Positions 3,886-39,600 of a stretch of DNA of 64,000 bases are shown in pieces. Both the position numbers and the translations under genes were made by a program. The notes beneath the pieces were generated by a model that made no database searches, was not told the origin of the DNA, and saw only the letters and a program-made list of their open reading frames with translations. The stretch is from assembly GCA_053919585.1 (NCBI GenBank), contig CM132787.1. One strand, 5' to 3'. This DNA comes from Euprymna scolopes. Lineage: Eukaryota. Each line of letters begins with the position of its first letter. Positions within the stretch are counted from its first letter, which is position 1.

Positions 3886-4329
3886 TTATATATAAAAGGA
3901 ACATAGTTTGTGTATATGTGTGTGTGAGTTTGGTTTCTTATAGACTCCGAAACAGCTGGACCAATTTTTTTTTTAATTTCAGACAAATGTATTTTATATA
4001 TTTGGGAGTGTTCTTAAATAGGTTTTGTATCGAAATGACTCTGATAAGTATCGAAAATCAATAATCGAAAAAATCCTATTAAAGAAGAAACAATCTGATT
4101 ATTACCAAAGTAAACACTCTTATACAACCTAACATCACAAGTGCATTTGAAAAGTTTCATCACCACACAAGCAGAAGGGCCAGACATATAAAATCATCAG
4201 TAGGATTTTTGATAATACAGGGGTGCATTCAAAATGAATGTTTCTGTTTAGAGTGCAATCGAATTATAATACTTGACTTTTACAAGAATATGTGCATTTT
4301 GTTGCCATTTAATAAATGTTACAGTTTGA

Positions 4330-14024: not shown

Positions 14025-14426
14025 TGTAAAAGTGAGAAATTACTGTAAGAAAAAAATGTAGGGAAAAATTCAAGATGGCGCCCGACTCTCTCTTTAACAC
14101 GGTAAGATATCCTCAACACGGCACAAGAAGCAACAGCCACACGATTCCCCAGCCAACTCAATCGTCACTCACCCACGTCTTTCCCCTCACCCGCTTTTAT
14201 CGTCGTTCTAGGTCGGCTAAATTTGCATATTCCGAGAATTCGTGTGACTTTGCGAGACATCATACTTTACAAAAGACGGCGGTCGCCATCTTGGTCCCTC
14301 TTTTCTATTTTTGGTCGGTAACGCTGAGCTGGTCTCGAGGTAAGTCTTTTTCCCCTCATCCGTCTCTCCCACGTACCCACACAACACGCAAACACGCGGG
14401 CGCTTATCTCCTGGATGCACGTTACA
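14025..14426 (-). repeat. 3' LTR (402 bp)
   Basis: tgtaaaagtg...gcacgttaca, adjacent to the PPT at 14427-14436. Confidence 0.93.
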
Positions 14427-16478
14427 CTCCCCCCTGATCTGATGATCACATAGAGAGCACTGGGGGGGTGGCCTTTTAGTGCGTGTGCTTCTGCGAAGAG
14501 GTACATTCACTGTTTCAGATTCGGGCTCTGGATCTGGTTCCGCCTCATCAGATGAAGTATCGCTATCAGTCTCTGGAAGGGGCTCACTGAATCCGTGCAT
14601 CGGCAGCTCATCGCTAGACGCTTCACTGCTTTCTTCTGTAGTTGTATGACGCACCTCGGTAGCTGGGCGAAGATCTCGCACATGTCGTGGGGTTCCATCG
14701 ACCAAAACAGACTGCTGGCTAATCACTCCAGATATGTGTCCTCGCTTAAACTTGTCGGTGCACCGATTTCCTGGAGGCCGCACCCACACTGGATCTCCCA
14801 CTTCATATCTGTTATATGTTCCCTTGTCGGTTGGCTGCGTAGTGTTGATTCCCTTCACTCCGACTTGGTACGTGTAAATAGCATTCGCAGGTGCGGTTGA
14901 AGGGGACGTCCCGTCCTTTGGCGTAATGTTGTACCAATATGTTGCTTCCGCAATAGTACATCGCTTCCTGGCAGCAATTCTCTTGATGCTGCGATGGCTT
15001 CTTTCAGCAATGCCATTTCCTGATGGCACATGCGCACATCGCAACCGTAGACGGACGCCCCACTCATCTAACAACTGCCGGACTTGCTGGCTACAAAACG
15101 CTGCATCATTGTCAGTCAGGAGCTCTTCCGGCGCACCTCGCTCAAAAAAAATGGATGATAGGTGGCGAACAACATTTGCTGAATCCTGTCTGGTCATCTG
15201 CCGCCACACCGCAAATCTCGTAGGCCCGCAATCAATGAGAGTTAGAAAGGGCTTGCCACTGTAATGGGTAATATCCATGGCCAGCCGCTGCCACACACTC
15301 TCAACTTCCAAGCGACCCTTCTGCCATCGCTCTGGTGCAGGATCAATAGACTGGCAAGCCTCACAATTTCTGACGATCTGTCTGACATCCATCTTGGTCA
15401 CTGCTGGGTATGCACGCCTCACAAAATAAAGGGTCCTCTTGATACCCGGATGTCCGCTCTGTGCATGAATTTTTTGTATTTGACATGGGTCGATTGCAAC
15501 TGCACAAGATCGAGCAGTAATCTCCATTCCCATCTTCGCGGCTTCATACCATTTGTGAGGTACACGGGTCAGTTGGTCAGCACGATTACAATGTGATGGC
15601 ACCAGAGTGACGCTCAGTGATAGCCCATACTCAGATACCAGGTTTTTTAGCGTGTCTAGCCTTCTCCGTATTAACATTTCGCTTGCTGCCTTGGTACGGA
15701 TTCGTGTCCGTCCTGAAAGTGTGTCAGACACCCAGTGGTAGACACAGAGAGAATCTGTGTACAAGGTCAACTTCTTAGACTGCCATTGCAGGGCCAGATT
15801 TACCCCCTTTACAACAGCGTCCAGCTCTGCCAGGTTGATATGCTGAGAATCTGTTACGGGCCGCAGCCAACATGCATCCTCGAACACGTTTCCTCCTTGC
15901 TCCAACGATACTCCCAACGCCAAAGAACTGGCATCAACCCACACACCTACGTTGTCTCCGTTAACACACCACCGCCCACAGGCAGGGTCCTTCTTGTTCA
16001 CTCTCTCCAGTGTCTCCTTAATCATCAGAGTTAGTAGGACATCATCGGATATGTCATCCCAACCCGTGGTTGTTAAATTTGCTCTGCGTTTAATCACACC
16101 AACAGCTGCGCGGAGCCAGCCACAGACTGGTAAGTGACCAACAAGTTTTCCACACCAAGAAAAAACGGTCCGCCTTGTAACGAGGTTGGGGATGCTTGGA
16201 ATTTCACTGCCACGCCTCCATTGTAGGGTGCCATCCTCTTCATAAACATCCAATCCCAATACACGTGCTCCTTCCCTTAAACGTTCGGGATTCTTGCATT
16301 CCAGACCAAACTGAGCCAACTTTTCTTTGACACACGACGCAGACTGTACATCTTCATTGACGTATACGTCATCAATGTAAGCTGACGTTGAGTCCCTCAT
16401 GGGCTTTTCTTGGGACAATACTGTGTTGACAATAGTCTTCATGATCTGTGGTGCCACATTTAGGCCGAAGCCAAGGCG
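14217..16478 (-). CDS. pol: 5'-truncated pol: RT C-terminal half, RNase H, HHCC + DDE integrase, SH3-like region and acidic tail
   Basis: 746-aa open frame preceded in frame by RLGFGLNV; YIDD; VDASS/NLAELDAV/TDS/NRADQL; HAQSGHPG...CEAC; MDITH/TDND/GIAER; no stops; gag, protease and RT N-terminus absent. Confidence 0.9.
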   Translation of the reverse strand, partial: RLGFGLNVAPQIMKTIVNTVLSQEKPMRDSTSAYIDDVYVNEDVQSASCVKEKLAQFGLECKNPERLREGARVLGLDVYEEDGTLQWRRGSEIPSIPNLVTRRTVFSWCGKLVGHLPVCGWLRAAVGVIKRRANLTTTGWDDISDDVLLTLMIKETLERVNKKDPACGRWCVNGDNVGVWVDASSLALGVSLEQGGNVFEDACWLRPVTDSQHINLAELDAVVKGVNLALQWQSKKLTLYTDSLCVYHWVSDTLSGRTRIRTKAASEMLIRRRLDTLKNLVSEYGLSLSVTLVPSHCNRADQLTRVPHKWYEAAKMGMEITARSCAVAIDPCQIQKIHAQSGHPGIKRTLYFVRRAYPAVTKMDVRQIVRNCEACQSIDPAPERWQKGRLEVESVWQRLAMDITHYSGKPFLTLIDCGPTRFAVWRQMTRQDSANVVRHLSSIFFERGAPEELLTDNDAAFCSQQVRQLLDEWGVRLRLRCAHVPSGNGIAERSHRSIKRIAARKRCTIAEATYWYNITPKDGTSPSTAPANAIYTYQVGVKGINTTQPTDKGTYNRYEVGDPVWVRPPGNRCTDKFKRGHISGVISQQSVLVDGTPRHVRDLRPATEVRHTTTEESSEASSDELPMHGFSEPLPETDSDTSSDEAEPDPEPESETVNVPLRRSTRTKRPPPQCSLCDHQIRGECNVHPGDKRPRVCVLCGYVGETDEGKKTYLETSSALPTKNRKEGPRWRPPSFVKYDVSQSHTNSRNMQI

Positions 16479-30224: not shown

Positions 30225-31840
30225 AACATCAATAAGCGCATGCTATCATAAAAAACCTTAACACTTCAAAAACATGTGGACCCGATCTCATCCCAGCTGT
30301 GCTATTAAAAAAGTGCTCAGCCGAAGTAGCTCCAGTTCTTTCCAAACTCTACAACAAATGCCTTAATGAATCTTGCTTTCCGGGCTGTTGGAAAACTGCT
30401 TTTGTGGTACCAGTTTCAAGAATTCTGGCGAAAGAACTGACCCATTAAATTATCGCCCTATTAGCCTCCTCCCACTTTTTGCCAAAATATTTGAGACCTT
30501 AATTAACCATGCTCTAGTCCATCACTTTACAGATGCTAAACTTCTGACTGGCAAACAATATGGATTTAGACAAGCCCGTTCCACAACAGACATCCTAACT
30601 GTAATCTCTGGACGTATATACCATTCACTGGACAAAGCGGGGGAGGGCAGAGCAGTAGCTCTAGATATATCTTAGGCATTTGACAGGGTATGGCATGAGG
30701 GTCTCCTCAGGAAAATTAGATCATATGGTATCACTGGTAGAATACTTAACATAATTAAATCCTTCTTAGATAAGAGAAAAATCCAGGTTGTCCTCGACGT
30801 TCATGCATCTAAACAATATGATATAAATGCGGGAGTGCCCCAGGGATCTATCCTTGGACCTCTACTTTTCCTGATATTCATAAATGATCTCCCCGACAAA
30901 ATTTCCTCTGAGATGGGTACATATGCTGATGACACCACACTCTATAACAGGCATGACAGGAAAACAAATGAACACATATCTAAAGAAATGGCAGAAACAC
31001 TAGAGGATGACCTCCAATCTGTAATGGAATGAGGACAAAAATGGATGGTCACTTTCAATGCTGCCAAGACTAAACTAGTTTCATTCAATAATTACAAGAA
31101 ACCTTCTCTACCACCTATAGCAATGGCCAACGACTCTTTATCTGAGAGTACATCTTTCAAACTCCTTGGCCTAACGTTCACAGGAAACATGAGTTGGAAC
31201 AATTACATTGAAGGCATTGCCAGGGCCGCTGCAAGGAAGGTAGGCTCTCTATACCGTGCTAGAAAACTACTAACACCTGAAAGTATCCAGTACCTCTATA
31301 AGGCATTCATTCGCCCATGTATGGAGTATTGCTGTCACATTTGGGCTGGTGCATCTGCTACTAGTCTCTTGCTCCTTGACAAGGTTCAAAAGAGAATCGC
31401 AAATCTGATAGGCTCTGAACTGGCATCTAAGCTTCAGCCTCTGTCCCATCGACGAAACGTTGCATTCCTCTGCCTGGTGAATGCTCTGACGAACTGCAAG
31501 CACTTGTGCCCCCACGACGTGAACACCCTCGATAAACCCGACAGGCTGCAAAATCCCACCCCCACACTGTAGAGATCCCTAGATGTAAAAGATCTTTCTA
31601 CTCCAGTAGTTTTTTCCCCAGAACCGCTAGACTTTGGAATTCCATTCCAGGTCCCTGCTTCCCCAAATGTACTGACATGCAGAAGTTCAAGTGCAACGTG
31701 AACTGACATCTTGCTGCCCAAATCCCTACATAGTACCCCAGTAGATGTTTCCCCTGATAGTAGCCCCCTACACCAAAGTGGCAATGTGCCTTGTTTGGGG
31801 TGAAAATGTAATAAAAAAAAAATAAATAAAAATAAAAAAA
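30225..31840 (+). mobile_element. CR1/L2-like LINE, family 2; decayed RT to poly-A
   Basis: NYRPISLL, QYGFR, LDIS*AFDRVWH, GVPQGSILGP, YADD, MEYCCHIW; A-rich tail. Confidence 0.92.
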
Positions 31841-32403: not shown

Positions 32404-32460
32404 CACTACTACTACTACTACTACTACTACTAATTAGTAGCTTCAGTACTACTACTAATA
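32404..32460. repeat. (CTA)n microsatellite
   Basis: Direct reading. Confidence 0.85.
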
Positions 32461-32682: not shown

Positions 32683-32816
32683 NNNNNNNNNNNNNNNNNN
32701 NNNNNNNNNNNNNNNNNNNNNNNNNNNNNNNNNNNNNNNNNNNNNNNNNNNNNNNNNNNNNNNNNNNNNNNNNNNNNNNNNNNNNNNNNNNNNNNNNNNN
32801 NNNNNNNNNNNNNNNN
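32683..32816. other. Assembly gap (N run)
   Basis: 134 N. Confidence 1.
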
Positions 32817-32889
32817 AATCATTAGATCACTCAGGATGGATGTTACAGCATTTAAAAATAAATATTTAAATTTCAACGGTATGCTTTGA

Positions 32890-32960
32890 AGTTGGCCGTG
32901 GGATTTGTTCCTCGCTAATGGAGTCAAAGATAGCTTCGTGGCGGGGTTCGAATCTCCTGA
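32890..32960 (+). promoter_or_regulatory. tRNA-like Pol III head (B box clear, A box degenerate)
   Basis: GGTTCGAATCT at 32945-32955 within a T-arm-like hairpin gggg-ttcgaat-ctcc; A-box candidates tggccgtgg (32893) or tcgctaatgg (32912). Confidence 0.55.
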
Positions 32961-32979
32961 CTGGCAGTAATCGTGTCAC

Positions 32980-33025
32980 CCTGCACTGATGATTCCCGAA
33001 AGGATGAAACACTAGTGTCTGTAGG
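32980..33025 (+). ncRNA. Type I hammerhead ribozyme (this copy slightly degenerate)
   Basis: Stem I CCUGCA/UGUAGG; CUGAUGA 32986-32992; stem II (U)UCC-CGAAA-GGA(U); GAAA 33006-33009; palindromic stem III ACACUAGUGU; GUC cleavage triplet ending at 33019. Confidence 0.8.
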
Positions 33026-33323
33026 TATTTAAAAATTATTATAGCAATGATAATAATAATATGTGTGTGGGGGGGGGGGTATATTTCTATAAAATATAAA
33101 TATATATAAATATTAAATATAATCCCCTCGATACAGCTACACACTGGTTCATTTAAGGAACAGTACATCTTCATTTAAATCCTGTTATCTCAAGTAACAG
33201 TCATTAAATGGATACTCTACCAGATAAGATGAATTCTTGTTCTGGAATCCGGTAGAACAAGAGATCACAAATAAGATGCATTTGTTGTGAAACCAAAATT
33301 ATAAGACTACCATGAGTAGTACT

Positions 33324-33420
33324 TAGTGATGGGAGGATTCCAAAATTTTTCCTGATTCCGATACAATTACTGATTCCGTTCTAAATTTCCGATTCCAATA
33401 TGATTCCCGATTCCGATTCT
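33324..33420 (+). mobile_element. Probable hAT-type terminus with GATTCC subterminal repeats (other end not found)
   Basis: TAGTGATGGG start followed by about 6 gattcc/gattct motifs. Confidence 0.45.
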
Positions 33421-34062: not shown

Positions 34063-36603
34063 TTAATTAATGCTAAAGCCCAAGAAATCTAGTGACGTTA
34101 CATCAAAAATAGATTTGGATGTTGATATTTTAAAGTTGTTTTCTTGTAAAATTCTAAAAACTGTGTCTGTATCTTTTTGAGAATGTTCGGCGTCACTGAA
34201 AATTAAAATATAATCTATATATATATATATATAAATACAGTCTATATCGCTTAAAATTTTGTCCATATATCTTTGAAATGTCGCTGCTGAGTTTTTTAAT
34301 CCAAAAGGCATAAATTCGCAATAAAAAAATCCCATTGGATAAATAATTACTGTTTTCGGAATATCAGCTGGTGCATTTTGATTTGGTGGTATTTTAGAAA
34401 ACGGTTGCTTATTTGCGAGTTTCATGGTAAACGAATTTATATTGGGTACAGGGTATCTATCGCATTTGGTTATGCTAATTAATGCGTGGTAATCGCCACA
34501 GCAGCAGTATCCTTCACTTTGCTTAGGAACAAGACATGGTTCGGCCATTCGCTATTTGATGAGGTTATCATTTAGGAGCTTTTGGAATTCTGTTTCAGTT
34601 GCTTTTAGTCTTTCAGCAGAGAGCTGTCTGGACTTCACAAAGACTGGTGAATGGCTACTTATGTCTGTTCTGTAATAAAAGCCGCAATAATTTTTACTGG
34701 TATTCATTTGTGGGGAAATAATTTCTGGGTATTTATCCAGGCTGGTTTGAATAAATGGAAGTAGTTCCACTTTATTGATGGTCATTTAAACTGGAGGTCC
34801 TGTAGTCAATTTTAAATTCTTTCTGGTAGCTGTTAATGGATCGTAAATGATTTTATTCCTGCAGTCAATTGTTAAACCGAATTTGTTCAAGAAATCAAAT
34901 CCACGGAGGGGATTGGTGATATCAGCGATCACGAACGTCCAAGAGAAGGATCGGCGCTTCTACACTATTAGGATGAAATTTCGGAAATCGTAAAACTGAA
35001 TTTCACATGAAAACAATGGTATCTTTGTATTCCTCATATTTTTAAGATGATTATATCCAAAAAATTACGAAAATCGATAAGGTAGAAAATTATTTCTTAA
35101 AGAAAATAGAATTTGAAGAACACTATTGTACTTGCTAATGTAAAACACAGGAGAGTTAATAAGGGAGGTAATTTCCTCCCGATAATTCTTGGAAAACTCA
35201 GAAAAAGATTTTGGAATTTTCCAAATAGACCCGAGGAAATTGAATCAATGCGATATTTATTATTTTTGCTCAAATAAAATGCATATTTTGGATTTCCTGC
35301 ATGCCATGGACTTTTGGCAGATTCACTGTATATATGTTATGTTTATTTTGTTGTTGGTTTTGTGTTAGTCACATTAAACATTTAGAGTTACTTCTCTTGT
35401 TTACGGTTTCATTTCGCTTTATTTTAGAAAAACAAGATGGCCGCAATTTTTCACCTGCTAACACAATTAAAGTTGTGTTTTTTAATAATTCAATAATATT
35501 CAGGTAATTTCGACCACATAATTTGGAAGCTACTATTGTAACTTATTAGAGTTGACAAAAAAAAAAATCAGTTGAAACCATTGTTTTTTTATTTGAAAAC
35601 TCCATTTATCAACTACAAAATTTCGTCCTAATAGTGTAAAAGCACTGAAGGATCTTCTCAGACTTGGTATTTCAATTTCCAGACTTGCTTGTTCAGGGCA
35701 TTTTATTTTGTCTTCATAGGCCAGTAGAAAAGGACACTGGTGTTGGGTTTAGTGTGATACTGTTTATTATTGATGCTGGTACTGTTGAAATACTTGCACC
35801 GGAACCCACGATAAACTTTAATATAGTTGTTCATAATCGTAGTGGTGAACTCATAGGGATAGACATGGTTTGCATAAATTAGTTATCCAAGTAAAGGCCA
35901 TTTGCACCACAGTTTGTATATCCTTGCTGGGTCGGTGAAGTAGATATGTGCTCTACACACTTTAGTTTTCTGTTTTGGGAAATATGGTTTTATTCCCACC
36001 GGAAGACACGTGATGTCATTATTCTTATCCATTTTTATTTTTATTTATTTTTTTTTTTTGCAGCTTGCTGAGCAATAAACACTGTTTCGTTTATGCCATT
36101 CAGCAATGGCATAAGTTCATCTTTCTGTTTTCTTAGTTGTGTAGGAGTTGGCTCTTTTTGTAAGGCAATAACTGGGGAGATTGTTGCTGGCAGAACTTGA
36201 AGAAATTTGTGTAGCACAAGTTTTTCTCTGACATTTGTTTTGCTATCGACAGCATCTCTTGTAAATATGATGATGGCTGACCTGTTGTTGTTGTCGACAT
36301 TAATTTATCAAGCAATTCCGGTTTTGCCCATTTGTGTGCCTCGATTAGTGCACATATTACTTTCTCATAGCTTTTCAACTTTAGCACCGATATCAGTATT
36401 TTTGTAACTACCTCTGCAGGCAGAGATGATATTACTGTAAAGAATTTTGTAGGGGAGGCGGCTATATTGTGCAGATGGAATTGCACTTCCAGAATGAAAA
36501 ACCAGCCATTCACTGCCGTCTCCATGAATTCTGATGTTTTAATGTTTATTTGTTGGAGGCAAGCTTCTTCCATTTTTTTCTTTTTATTTTGTTGACAAGA
36601 CAA
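34063..36603 (-). pseudogene. Decayed Ty3/Gypsy gag-pro-RT, interrupted by a MITE; 5' end abuts the satellite
   Basis: Gag WFFILEVQF...TKFFTVISSLP; CRAHIYF...WCKWP; protease FIVGSGASIS; FSWTFVIADI; DRYPVPNI, MPFGLKNSAATFQRYMD, YIDY. Confidence 0.88.
34963..35636. mobile_element. 674-bp MITE-like TIR element flanked by TA
   Basis: TA|cactattaggatgaaattt...aaatttcgtcctaatagtg|TA; weaker inverted similarity extends ~60 bp. Confidence 0.8.
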
Positions 36604-36623: not shown

Positions 36624-39600
36624 TAAAGGATTTTTTTATGAAAGCTTTAATTAATTAAGTCTATGTAAAGGGTTTTTTGTGAAAGCTTTAATTAATTAGG
36701 TCTATGTAAACGATTTTTTTATGAAAGCTTTAATTAATTAGATCTATGTAAAGGATTTTTTTATGAAAGCTTAAATTAATTAAGTCTATGTTAAGGATTT
36801 TTTATGAAAGCTTTAATTAATTAGGTGTATGTAAAGGATTTTTTTATGAAAGCTTTAATTAATTAAGTCTATGTAAAGGATTTGTTTATGAAAGCTTTAA
36901 TTAATTAGGTCTATGTAAAGGATTTTTTTGTGAAAGCTTTAATTGATTAGGTCTATGTAAAGGATTTTTTTATGAAAGCTTTAATTAATTAGGTGTATGT
37001 AAAGGATTTTTTTATGAAAGCTTTAATTAATTAAGTCTATGTAAAGGATTTTTTTGTGAAAGCTTTAATTAATTAAGTCTATGTAAAGGATTTTTTTATG
37101 AAAGCTTTAATTAATTAAGTCTATGTAAAGGATTTTTTTATGAAAGCTTTAATTAATTAAGTCTATGTAAAGGATTTTTTTATGAAAGCTTTAATTAATT
37201 AGGTCTATGTAAAGGGTTTTTTGTGAAAGCTTTAATTAATTAAGTCTATGTAAAGGATTTTTTTATGAAAGCTTTAATTAATTAGGTCTATGTAAAGGGT
37301 TTTTTGTGAAAGCTTTAATTAATTAGGTCTGTGTAAAGGATTTTTTTATGAAAGCTTTAATTAATTAGGTCTATGTAAAGGGTTTTTTGTGAAAGCTTTA
37401 ATTAATTAGGTCTATGTAAAGGATTTTTTTATGAAAGCTTTAATTAATTAGGTCTATGTAAACGATTTTTTTATGAAAGCTTTAATTAATTAGATCTATG
37501 TAAAGGATTTTTTTATGAAAGCTTTAATTAATTAAGTCTATGTAAAGGGTTTTTTGTGAAAGCTTTAATTAATTAGGTCTATGTAAAGGATTTTTTTATG
37601 AAAGCTTTAATTAATTAGGTCTATGTAAACGATGTTTTTATGAAAGCTTTAATTAATTAGGTCTATGTAAAGGATTTTTTTATGAAAGCTTTAATTAATT
37701 AGGTCTATGTAAAGGATTTTTTTATGAAAGCTTTAATTAATTAGGTCTATGTAAAGGGTTTTTTGTGAAAGCTTTAATTAATTAGGTCTATGTAAAGGAT
37801 TTTTTTATGAAAGCTTTAATTAATTAGGTCTATGTAAACGATTTTTTTATGAAAGCTTTAATTAATTAGATCTATGTAAAGGATTTTTTTATGAAAGCTT
37901 AAATTAATTAGGTCTATGTAAAGGATTTTTTTATGAAAGCTTTAATTAATTAGGTCTATGTAAAGGATTTTTTTATGAAAGCTTTAATTAATTAGGTCTA
38001 TGTAAAGGATTTTTTTATGAAAGCTTTAATTAATTAGGTCTATGTAAAGGGTTTTTTGTGAAAGCTTTAATTAATTAGGTCTATGTAAAGGATTTTTTTA
38101 TGAAAGCTTTAATTAATTAGGTCTATGTAAAGGATTTTTTTATGAAAGCTTTAATTAATTAGGTCTATGTAAAGGATTTTTTTATGAAAGCTTTAATTAA
38201 TTAGGTCTATGTAAAGGGTTTTTTGTGAAAGCTTTAATTAATTAGGTCTATGTAAAGGATTTTTTTATGAAAGCTTTAATTAATTAGGTCTATGTAAAGG
38301 ATTTTTTGTGAAAGCTTTAATTAATTAGGTCTATGTAAAGGATTTTTTATGAAAGCTTTAATTAATTAGGTCTATGTAAAGGATTTTTTTATGAAAGCTT
38401 TAATTAATTAGGTCTATGTAAAGGATGTTTTTATGAAAGCTTTAATTAATTAGGTCTATGTAAAGGATTTTTTGTGAAAGCTTTAATTAATTAGGTCTAT
38501 GTAAAGGATTTGTTTATGAAAGCTTTAATTAATTAGGTCTATGTAAAGGATTTTTTTGTGAAAGCTTTAATTGATTAGGTCTATGTAAAGGATTTGTTTA
38601 TGAAAGCTTTAATTAATTAGGTCTATGTAAAGGATTTTTTGTGAAAGCTTCAATTGATTAGGTCTATGTAAAGGATTTTTTGTGAAAGCTTTAATTAATT
38701 AGGTCTATGTAAAGGATTTTTTGTGAAAGCTTTAATAAATTAGGTCTATGTAAAGGGTTTTTTGTGAAAGCTTTAATTAATTAGGTCTATGTAAAGGATT
38801 TTTTGTGAAAGCTTTAATTAATTAAGTCTATGTAAAGGATTTTTTATGAAAGCTTTAATAAATTAGGTCTATGTAAAGGATTTTTTATGAAAGCTTTAAT
38901 TAATTAGGTCTATGTAAAGGATTTTTTTATGAAAGCTTTAATTAATTAAGTCTATGTAAAGGATTTTTTTATGAAAGCTTTAATTAATTAAGTCTATGTA
39001 AAGGATTTTTTTATGAAAGCTTTAATAAATTAGGTCTATGTAAAGGATTTTTTGTGAAAGCTTTAATTAATTAGGTCTATGTAAAGGATTTTTTATGAAA
39101 GCTTTAATTAATTAGGTCTATGTAAAGGATTTTTTGTGAAAGCTTCAATTGATTAGGTCTATGTAAAGGATTTTTTGTGAAAGCTTTAATTAATTAGGTC
39201 TATGTAAAGGATTTTTTATGAAAGCTTCAATTGATTAGGTCTATGTAAAGGATTTTTTGTGAAAGCTTTAATTAATTAAGTCTATGTAAAGGATTTTTTT
39301 ATGAAAGCTTTAATTAATTAGGTCTATGTAAAGGATTTTTTATGAAAGCTTTAATTAATTAGGTCTATGTAAAGGATTTTTTGTGAAAGCTTTAATTAAT
39401 TAGGTCTATGTAAACGATTTTTTGTGAAAGCTTTAATTAATTAGGTCTATGTAAAGGATTTTTTATGAAAGCTTTAATTGATTAGGTCTATGTAAAGGAT
39501 TTTTTGTGAAAGCTTTAATTAATTAGGTCTATGTAAAGGATTTTTTTATGAAAGCTTTAATTAATTAAGTCTATGTAAAGGATTTTTTTATGAAAGCTTT

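What the first reader, a model, noticed from the sequence alone, without database searches (positions are those of the whole stretch)
32890..33030. tRNA-headed SINE-like unit carrying a type I hammerhead ribozyme (Sm-alpha/retrozyme-like)
Seen: a B box in a T-arm-like hairpin (32943-32957), then ~22 nt later a complete hammerhead core in the correct order. It has a 6-bp stem I (one G-U pair), CUGAUGA, a UCC/GGA stem II, GAAA, and GUC with predicted cleavage after 33019. Stem III is a perfect palindrome (ACACUAGUGU) with essentially no loop. Known: Schistosoma Sm-alpha repeats join a tRNA-like head to a type I hammerhead, and animal hammerheads with palindromic stem III can cleave as dimers. 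Inference: this is one copy of a ribozyme-bearing SINE/retrozyme family, possibly undescribed in this lineage. The stem II closing pair is U-U instead of the usual G-C, so this copy may be weak or dead.
Basis: partly seen in the sequence, partly recalled or inferred. Interest (0 to 1): 0.85.

Follow-up and report, generated by a model that had tools for sequence, protein, structure and literature searches.

The report
Solo hammerhead-ribozyme SINE-like repeat copy
This is one isolated, roughly 149-base copy of a very abundant non-coding jumping element of a mollusc genome that joins a tRNA-gene-like promoter piece to a self-cutting hammerhead RNA motif; it is a real but ordinary member of a known kind of element that this scan has already met many times in the same genome.

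Summary
At 32980-33025 (+) there is a complete type I hammerhead, preceded by an exact B box. The motif is sub-threshold in Rfam (HH9, 24.4 bits against a cut-off of 52). The window holds only this one copy.

Laying public reads shows that this stretch is massively repeated in the organism. In one DNA run, 26,719 contigs fit the laid 600 bases at 80% or better. Depth peaks about 100-fold over the hammerhead compared with the head. Other copies carry a B box at the same distance upstream. Exact 31-mers of the unit occur in DNA runs under at least four other organism labels.

The unit is about 149 nt (32891-33039, GC 46%) and sits in 26-27% GC DNA. There is no tandem partner and no Penelope-like ORF nearby.

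The U-U closing pair seems to be the family's normal state rather than private decay. No alternative letter stands out anywhere in the hammerhead.

On its own the RNA prefers a non-catalytic fold. Two copies cofold into the classic double hammerhead.

No read ends pile up at the predicted cut.

I could not fetch any family copies, so covariation is untested.

The scan has already described this element family on other DNA of this genome. Verdict: a new member of a known kind (Sm-alpha / animal retrozymes), of modest interest.

The parts
32891..32966 (+). tRNA-related head (76 nt). It has an acceptor-like closing stem, an A-box-like TGGCCGTGGG at 32894-32903, and the B box in a T-arm-like hairpin.
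   Evidence: Two X2 contigs lose homology exactly at 32891 (records 12 and 13). ARAGORN at a 60% threshold draws a weak cloverleaf over exactly 32891-32966. It is not recognised at normal thresholds.
32945..32954 (+). Pol III B box GGTTCGAATC (exact consensus).
   Evidence: Other family copies also carry GGGTTCGAATC at the same distance upstream of the hammerhead: the loose-end consensus before 32968 comes from 323 contigs in X2 and 151 reads in X24.
32967..32979 (+). 13-nt linker between the head and the hammerhead.
   Evidence: Alignments of most other copies break at 32968 (table 7).
32980..33025 (+). Type I hammerhead motif. Stem I is 32980-85/33020-25. CUGAUGA is 32986-92. Stem II with the U-U closing pair is 32993-33005. 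GAA is 33006-08. The palindromic stem III is 33009-18. C17 is 33019, so the predicted cut is 33019|33020.
   Evidence: Sequence. Rfam HH9 at 24.4 bits, E 5e-4, below the cut-off of 52. It is the only descriptor hit in the window. Summed depth is highest here (1.8-3.3 million in X2, against 7-30 thousand on the head), and no high-share variant is listed at 32977-33032. The dimer cofold gives the double hammerhead.
33026..33039 (+). Short A/T-rich tail, the 3' edge of the repeated unit.
   Evidence: Other copies diverge into A/T-rich sequence behind 33039 (loose ends in X2, X21 and X24). Contig homology ends at 33033-33038 (records 12 and 13). GC drops from 46% in the unit to 26% in the flank.

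Best explanation
The stretch 32891-33039 (+) is one solo unit of a very abundant, non-coding, non-autonomous retroelement family of this mollusc genome. The unit consists of a degenerate tRNA-gene-derived head that keeps the internal Pol III promoter boxes, a 13-nt linker, a canonical metazoan type I hammerhead, and a short A/T tail.

Proposed life cycle, inferred by analogy with Sm-alpha and animal retrozymes:
1. Master copies, probably tandem ones, are transcribed, probably by Pol III from the A and B boxes.
2. Two hammerheads pair through the palindromic stem III into a double hammerhead and cut after GUC.
3. Unit-length RNA, possibly circularised by a tRNA ligase, is copied by a reverse transcriptase supplied in trans. 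A Penelope-like element is the leading candidate.
4. The copy is inserted into A/T-rich DNA.

This particular copy is a by-product of that cycle. It has no partner hammerhead in cis and no nearby Pol III terminator, and its monomer fold is not the catalytic one. It is probably inert, apart from possibly pairing in trans with other family transcripts. The U-U pair at positions 10.1/11.1 is a family trait.
For: Shown:
- A complete core and three helices in the right order.
- Best Rfam hit is a hammerhead over the full model length.
- 26,719 contigs of one DNA run, and thousands of RNA reads and contigs, fit the laid 600-base stretch at 80% or better. Depth is concentrated on 32977-33036.
- Other copies have a B box at the same offset (table 7).
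- Contig homology edges fall at 32891 and at 33033-39 (table 8).
- In other copies the sequence 'goes back' from about 33039 to the head, which indicates tandem copies elsewhere (table 5).
- The unit is 46% GC in 26-27% GC flanks.
- Exact 31-mers of the unit are held at 0.5-0.58 in DNA runs of organisms B, C, D and E. All sampled words are held in one RNA-type run of organism A.
- The dimer MFE of -29.0 kcal/mol is the double hammerhead, with a 10-bp intermolecular stem III. The monomer MFE of -11.2 is a different fold, and the hammerhead fold costs -5.9.
- The + strand folds better than shuffles (z = -1.92). The - strand does not.

From the literature:
- Canonical metazoan hammerheads have helix I of 6 bp, helix II of 4 bp, and a short palindromic helix III that works in dimers (PMC4209133).
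- Sm-alpha is Pol III-driven and needs tandem copies (PMC6765202).
- Animal retrozymes occur in a mussel and other animals (PMC7229834).
- Retrozymes derive from Penelope pLTRs (bioRxiv 10.64898/2026.07.22.740005).
Against: - No family copy could be fetched as sequence, so stem covariation and the exact family state at 32993/33005 are not shown directly. 103 of the 143 variant rows are hidden.
- tRNA detectors do not recognise the head.
- No read ends pile up at 33019/33020 in two poly(A) RNA runs, although hundreds of reads cross the site (table 6).
- A G10.1-C11.1 pair is highly conserved in known active hammerheads (PMC4209133), so the U-U family may cleave poorly or not at all.
- No target-site duplication could be defined.
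- The 134-nt N run 74 nt upstream hides whether anything else belongs to the insertion.
- No Penelope-like ORF lies in the window. The neighbours are a LINE-type RT and a decayed Gypsy.
Confidence: 0.8

Rival explanations
1. The stretch is a detached piece of the 3' end (pLTR) of a Penelope-like element, not an independent SINE or retrozyme. The tRNA-like boxes plus hammerhead would then be the Penelope terminal module, left here by truncation.
For: The hammerhead module is about 100 times deeper than the head, as expected if many element types share it. Penelope-like elements always carry hammerheads near their 3' end and prefer microsatellite and (TA)n targets (PMC4209133, PMC8557442). Unchecked first-reader notes report Penelope GIY-YIG relics followed by a tRNA-type promoter and a hammerhead elsewhere in this genome.
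Against: No RT/GIY-YIG coding remnant lies next to the unit. Upstream is a LINE-type RT and downstream a Gypsy. Contig homology ends sharply at 32891, the first base of the tRNA-like shape. That fits a short unit with its own 5' end.
Confidence: 0.12
2. A host-exapted ribozyme with a cellular function at this locus, like the conserved intronic HH9/HH10 hammerheads of amniotes.
For: The best Rfam match is HH9. All sampled words of the unit occur in one RNA-type run.
Against: Thousands of look-alike copies exist. The surroundings are a TE-rich, gene-poor stretch beside a 27-kb satellite. The closing pair is non-canonical. No read ends mark the cleavage site.
Confidence: 0.03
3. A chance hammerhead-like string beside a chance B box.
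For: My relaxed descriptor hits 2% of shuffled 36-kb sequences, so a multi-gigabase genome would hold many chance hits. The Rfam score is far below the cut-off.
Against: Exactly this 60-nt segment is the depth peak of a massive repeat. Other copies keep a B box at the same spacing.
Confidence: 0.01

Closest known systems
Schistosoma Sm-alpha / Sj-alpha SINE-like hammerhead elements
   Same: A tRNA-gene-derived Pol III promoter region and a type I hammerhead sit in one short non-coding, high-copy unit. The promoter lies upstream of the cut site, so a solo copy cannot regenerate a full-length RNA (PMC6765202, PMC2770079).
   Different: The host phylum differs (mollusc, not flatworm). The unit here is about 149 nt, whereas I recall about 335 nt for Sm-alpha (from memory, not checked). 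The stem II closing pair is U-U instead of G-C. The head is not recognisable as a specific tRNA, whereas Sm-alpha derives from tRNA-Gln (PMC2770079). Sequence homology to Sm-alpha was not tested.
Animal non-LTR retrozymes (Cervera and de la Pena 2020)
   Same: A canonical metazoan type I hammerhead, low-GC repeats, thousands of copies, and occurrence in molluscs (a mussel). The short palindromic helix III implies dimeric cleavage (PMC7229834, PMC4209133).
   Different: Retrozymes are defined as tandem repeats of 170-400 bp expressed as circular RNA. This locus holds one unit of about 149 nt, and no circular RNA evidence was obtainable. In my keyword search of that paper, every mention of tRNA shown concerned tRNA ligase, tRNA processing or ligation, and none a promoter head.
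Penelope-like element pLTR hammerheads
   Same: A hammerhead near a 3' end followed by a short tail, a palindromic helix III, and insertion in A/T-rich or microsatellite DNA (PMC4209133, PMC8557442).
   Different: No RT/GIY-YIG ORF is present here. Penelope min-hammerheads have a long helix II (7-8 bp), an unpaired base before 10.1 and a conserved G10.1-C11.1. This one has the canonical 4-position helix II with U-U.
Rfam Hammerhead_HH9 (RF02275)
   Same: Full-length alignment to the model, with the core and stems I-III in register.
   Different: The score is 24.4 bits against a gathering score of 52. The outer extension of stem I is not formed and the closing pair of stem II is mismatched.

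Membership tests
Hammerhead ribozyme, type I | Conserved core CUGANGA ... GAAA ... UH in the right order around three helices, with helix I open | tested here: met
   (sequence). (the only descriptor hit in the window).
Hammerhead ribozyme, type I | G10.1-C11.1 pair closing helix II | tested here: not met
   U32993 and U33005. This is apparently the family's state.
Hammerhead ribozyme, type I | Score at or above an Rfam hammerhead gathering threshold | tested here: not met
   Nothing at gathering thresholds. HH9 scores 24.4 bits against 52.
Hammerhead ribozyme, type I | Self-cleavage after H17 | not testable with these tools
   The only indirect evidence is that no read ends pile up at 33019/33020 in two poly(A) RNA runs (table 6).
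Hammerhead ribozyme, type I | Compensatory changes in the stems among homologues | not tested
   No family copies could be fetched.
Sm-alpha-type SINE-like hammerhead element | tRNA-derived internal Pol III promoter (A and B boxes) | tested here: inconclusive
   The B box is exact. The A box matches about 9 of 11 positions at 32894-32903, 51 nt upstream. A cloverleaf appears only at a 60% ARAGORN threshold, and there is no tRNA hit at normal thresholds.
Sm-alpha-type SINE-like hammerhead element | Hammerhead in the same short non-coding unit, downstream of the promoter | tested here: met
   The hammerhead starts 25 nt after the B box. Other copies have the same arrangement.
Sm-alpha-type SINE-like hammerhead element | High copy number, dispersed and tandem | tested here: met
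   26,719 contigs were laid in one DNA run, and 'goes back' joints are seen in other copies. This locus itself is a single copy.
Animal non-LTR retrozyme | Tandem repeats of 170-400 bp, each with a type I hammerhead | tested here: not met
   The window has one unit of about 149 nt and no second hammerhead. The N run upstream cannot be read.
Animal non-LTR retrozyme | Expressed as unit-length linear and circular RNA | not testable with these tools
   Only poly(A) libraries were laid, and they show no back-joint at unit length and no end pile-up.
Penelope-like element (pLTR) | Adjacent RT plus GIY-YIG ORF | tested here: not met
   The neighbouring ORFs are a LINE-type RT (30373-31572, +) and a Gypsy gag/PR/RT (34063-36603, -).

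The most novel reading that the evidence does not exclude
The U10.1-U11.1 hammerhead is not a dead relic. On this reading it is a conserved, catalytically competent variant that cuts only as a double hammerhead. Together with the tRNA-like head it forms an unusually compact (about 150 nt) Pol III-driven ribozyme SINE, shared by several related mollusc species and mobilised by Penelope-type reverse transcriptase. That would be a second, independent origin of the Sm-alpha design.
Probability: 0.3. Interest if true: 0.55.

Novelty: new member of a known kind. Interest (0 to 1): 0.3.

Why it matters
The combination of a tRNA-promoter head and a hammerhead is classically known only from schistosome Sm-alpha elements. 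Finding it as a major repeat in a mollusc would show that this design is either older or has arisen more than once. It would also give a second system for asking what hammerheads do for retroelements: RNA processing, circularisation or recognition by the reverse transcriptase.

The apparently family-wide U-U pair is a natural experiment on the metal-binding 10.1 position of the ribozyme.

This single copy adds little beyond what the scan has already recorded for the family. Its value is as one more dated, solo insertion.

Tried and rejected
1. Rfam at gathering thresholds over the whole window gave no hit.

2. ARAGORN over the whole window and at relaxed thresholds gave no tRNA.

3. Looking for other copies in the window by pattern, blastn and repeat finders gave none. 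The two other CTGATGA...GAAAC strings, at 4154-4200 and 14512-14551, lack the stems, and the second lies in a Gypsy ORF.

4. Fetching family copies failed by every route:
- A pattern scan of viral contigs returned only GC-rich hammerhead-core matches with G-C closing pairs, unrelated to this AT-rich family.
- A pattern scan of metagenome contigs returned nothing.
- An exact look-up of the window's Gypsy protein found no record. Its homologues are at most 80% identical, and the one long contig I tried returned no DNA.
- Using the open reverse-strand frame across the unit as a pseudo-protein handle gave no word-sharing candidates. In the exhaustive HMMER search it gave only three hits that look unrelated. 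All three are repetitive proteins, and the hammerhead-like stretch of the best one does not back-translate to CUGAUGA.

5. A 10-nt direct repeat ATTTAAAAAT (32850-59 and 33027-36) was considered as a target-site duplication. I rejected it because other copies share the 33027-33039 tail, and such strings are common in this A/T-rich DNA.

6. A Penelope-like partner next to the unit was looked for and not found.

7. The strand bias of the RNA reads was not interpreted, because the library strandedness is unknown.

Full report
**Observation.**
- An exact B box GGTTCGAATC at 32945-32954. It is the only match in the window even with one mismatch allowed. It sits in a 4-pair T-arm-like hairpin.
- 25 nt after the B box, the stem I 5' strand CCUGCA (32980-85).
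- CUGAUGA (32986-92).
- Stem II UCC/GGA with loop CGAAA, closed by U32993 and U33005.
- GAA (33006-08).
- The 10-nt palindrome ACACUAGUGU (33009-18).
- C17 at 33019.
- The stem I 3' strand UGUAGG (33020-25). This gives six pairs with one G-U.

Rfam at gathering thresholds reports nothing in the window. In E-value mode on 304 nt the best hit is Hammerhead_HH9 over the whole model, at 24.4 bits and E 5e-4, against a cut-off of 52. The mismatched stem II closing pair and the unformed outer stem I are flagged.

My own descriptor finds only this site in the window, and hits 6 of 300 dinucleotide shuffles. The string alone is therefore suggestive, not proof. The window holds no second copy.

**It is a repeat family.** I laid one DNA run and three RNA runs on 32817-33416 at 80% likeness or better.
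- In the DNA run X2, 26,719 contigs fitted the laid stretch.
- Summed depth is 7-30 thousand over the head (32877-32956) and 210 thousand at 32957-76. It reaches 1.8-3.3 million over 32977-33036 and falls to zero in the unique flank at 33057-33176.
- The hammerhead module is therefore the most repeated and best conserved part.
- Where other copies stop aligning (before 32968), their consensus reads GTTGCCGGGTTCGAATCTATCGACTGGTGT. This comes from 323 contigs in X2 and 151 reads in X24. It is a B box at the same offset, so the head-plus-hammerhead design is general in the family.
- Two contigs lose homology exactly at 32891 on the left and at 33033-38 on the right (records 12 and 13).
- Behind 33039, other copies run into A/T-rich sequence.
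- Several contigs 'go back' from about 33039 to the head, which indicates tandem copies at other loci.

The unit 32891-33039 is 46% GC, in flanks of 26-27% GC. Exact 31-mers of the unit are held at 0.5-0.58 in DNA runs labelled with four other organism codes. All sampled words are held in one RNA-type run of organism A. Run labels such as 'mollusc metagenome' point to a mollusc.

**The head.** ARAGORN and the Rfam tRNA model do not recognise it. At a 60% threshold ARAGORN draws a poor cloverleaf over exactly 32891-32966. That is the same left edge as the contig homology edge. An A-box-like TGGCCGTGGG lies at 32894-32903, 51 nt before the B box. I therefore call the head tRNA-related and degenerate. 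The boxes, not the tRNA structure, are what is kept. The first run of four or more T on the + strand is at 33346, so a Pol III transcript would not terminate near the unit.

**The ribozyme.**
- As a monomer, the 53-nt region prefers a different hairpin (-11.2 kcal/mol) to the hammerhead fold (-5.9).
- Two copies cofold (-29.0) into the classic double hammerhead, with a 10-bp intermolecular stem III and trans stems I.
- This matches the published description of canonical metazoan hammerheads: helix I of 6 bp, helix II of 4 bp, and a short palindromic helix III that is active as a dimer (PMC4209133, PMC7229834).
- The + strand of the unit folds somewhat better than shuffles (z = -1.92). The - strand does not.

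**The U-U pair.** In one search, none of the 40 best-supported variant rows falls in 32977-33032, although depth is highest there. Majority variants are listed just outside it (32976, 33033) and at seven or more head positions. Run X1 has no T-to-G place at 10% or more anywhere in the stretch, so G at 32993 is rare among the look-alike hammerheads. The mismatch therefore seems inherited from the family, not a private lesion. 103 variant rows were hidden, so this is an inference and not a count. Known active hammerheads keep G10.1-C11.1 (PMC4209133). Whether the U-U family cleaves is open.

**RNA.** Hundreds of poly(A) reads in each run cross the site, and 93-94% of them run on into unlike sequence, so they come from other copies. 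No pile-up of read starts or ends was reported anywhere, including 33019/33020 (table 6). This is weak evidence against efficient cleavage in such transcripts. Poly(A) libraries are the wrong kind for small or circular RNAs.

**Surroundings.**
- Upstream on the + strand is a LINE-type RT (30373-31572), followed by an (ACT)9 run.
- A 134-nt N run lies at 32683-32816. I did not try to read it, and it hides any further upstream part.
- Downstream are two other abundant repeats, at 33197-33256 and 33317-33416.
- Next comes a decayed Gypsy on the - strand (34063-36603: gag DUF7041, protease, RT).
- From 36624 there is a 42-bp satellite.
- No Penelope-like ORF is present.

**What it is.** It is a solo unit of an abundant non-autonomous retroelement of the Sm-alpha / animal-retrozyme kind. 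The steps shown are the motif, the repetition, the shared architecture, the edges and the dimer-prone fold. The steps inferred by analogy are Pol III transcription, dimeric self-cleavage, ligase-mediated circularisation, and reverse transcription by a Penelope-like element (PMC6765202, PMC7229834, PMC8557442, bioRxiv 10.64898/2026.07.22.740005). As with Sm-alpha, the promoter lies upstream of the cut, so a solo copy cannot regenerate a complete RNA. This copy is most likely inert.

**Prior knowledge.** Retrozymes are described in a mussel (PMC7229834). The giant squid genome paper only counts 235 Hammerhead_1 hits (PMC6962438). I found no paper describing a tRNA-head plus hammerhead element in molluscs. 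Within this scan, many first-reader notes and several follow-up reports already describe tRNA-headed hammerhead families at other places of this same genome. Those are unchecked AI notes. My read-laying result agrees with them independently.

**Limits.** I could not obtain any family copy as sequence. Covariation, copy number, target sites and the partner element are therefore untested here.

Noticed in passing
window 36624-64000: A 42-bp satellite begins at 36624. Tandem Repeats Finder was run only to 40000 and found 81 copies at 94% match there. The same low-GC (about 21%), strongly G-over-C-skewed composition continues to the end of the window (GC skew about +0.55). It abuts the 5' end of a decayed Gypsy.
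   Followed up: no
window 34063-36603 (-): A decayed Gypsy-type LTR retrotransposon: gag (DUF7041), a protease motif and an RT broken by stops. Its integrase half is missing or unrecognisable.
   Followed up: partly
window 30373-31572 (+), 32405-32432: LINE-type reverse transcriptase ORF pieces, followed about 0.8 kb later by an (ACT)9 microsatellite that may be the LINE tail.
   Followed up: no
window 33317-33416: Another very abundant repeat built of GATTCC-containing 37-nt units (depth up to 0.84 million in X2). In other copies it is preceded by (TA)n. One X2 contig joins 33042 to 33337 with only 14 other letters between them, so in some copies it may directly follow the hammerhead unit.
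   Followed up: partly
window 33197-33256: A short hairpin-containing repeat that is abundant in DNA and in RNA reads, with conserved flanks in other copies. It may be a MITE or SINE fragment.
   Followed up: no
window 14217-16457 (-): A 746-aa open frame of an LTR element (DUF7047, RNase H, integrase). The closest public protein is only 80% identical.
   Followed up: partly
window 33067-33079: A (GT)3 run followed by a G11 run lies 28 nt behind the unit's tail, in otherwise A/T-rich DNA. Its origin is unknown.
   Followed up: no
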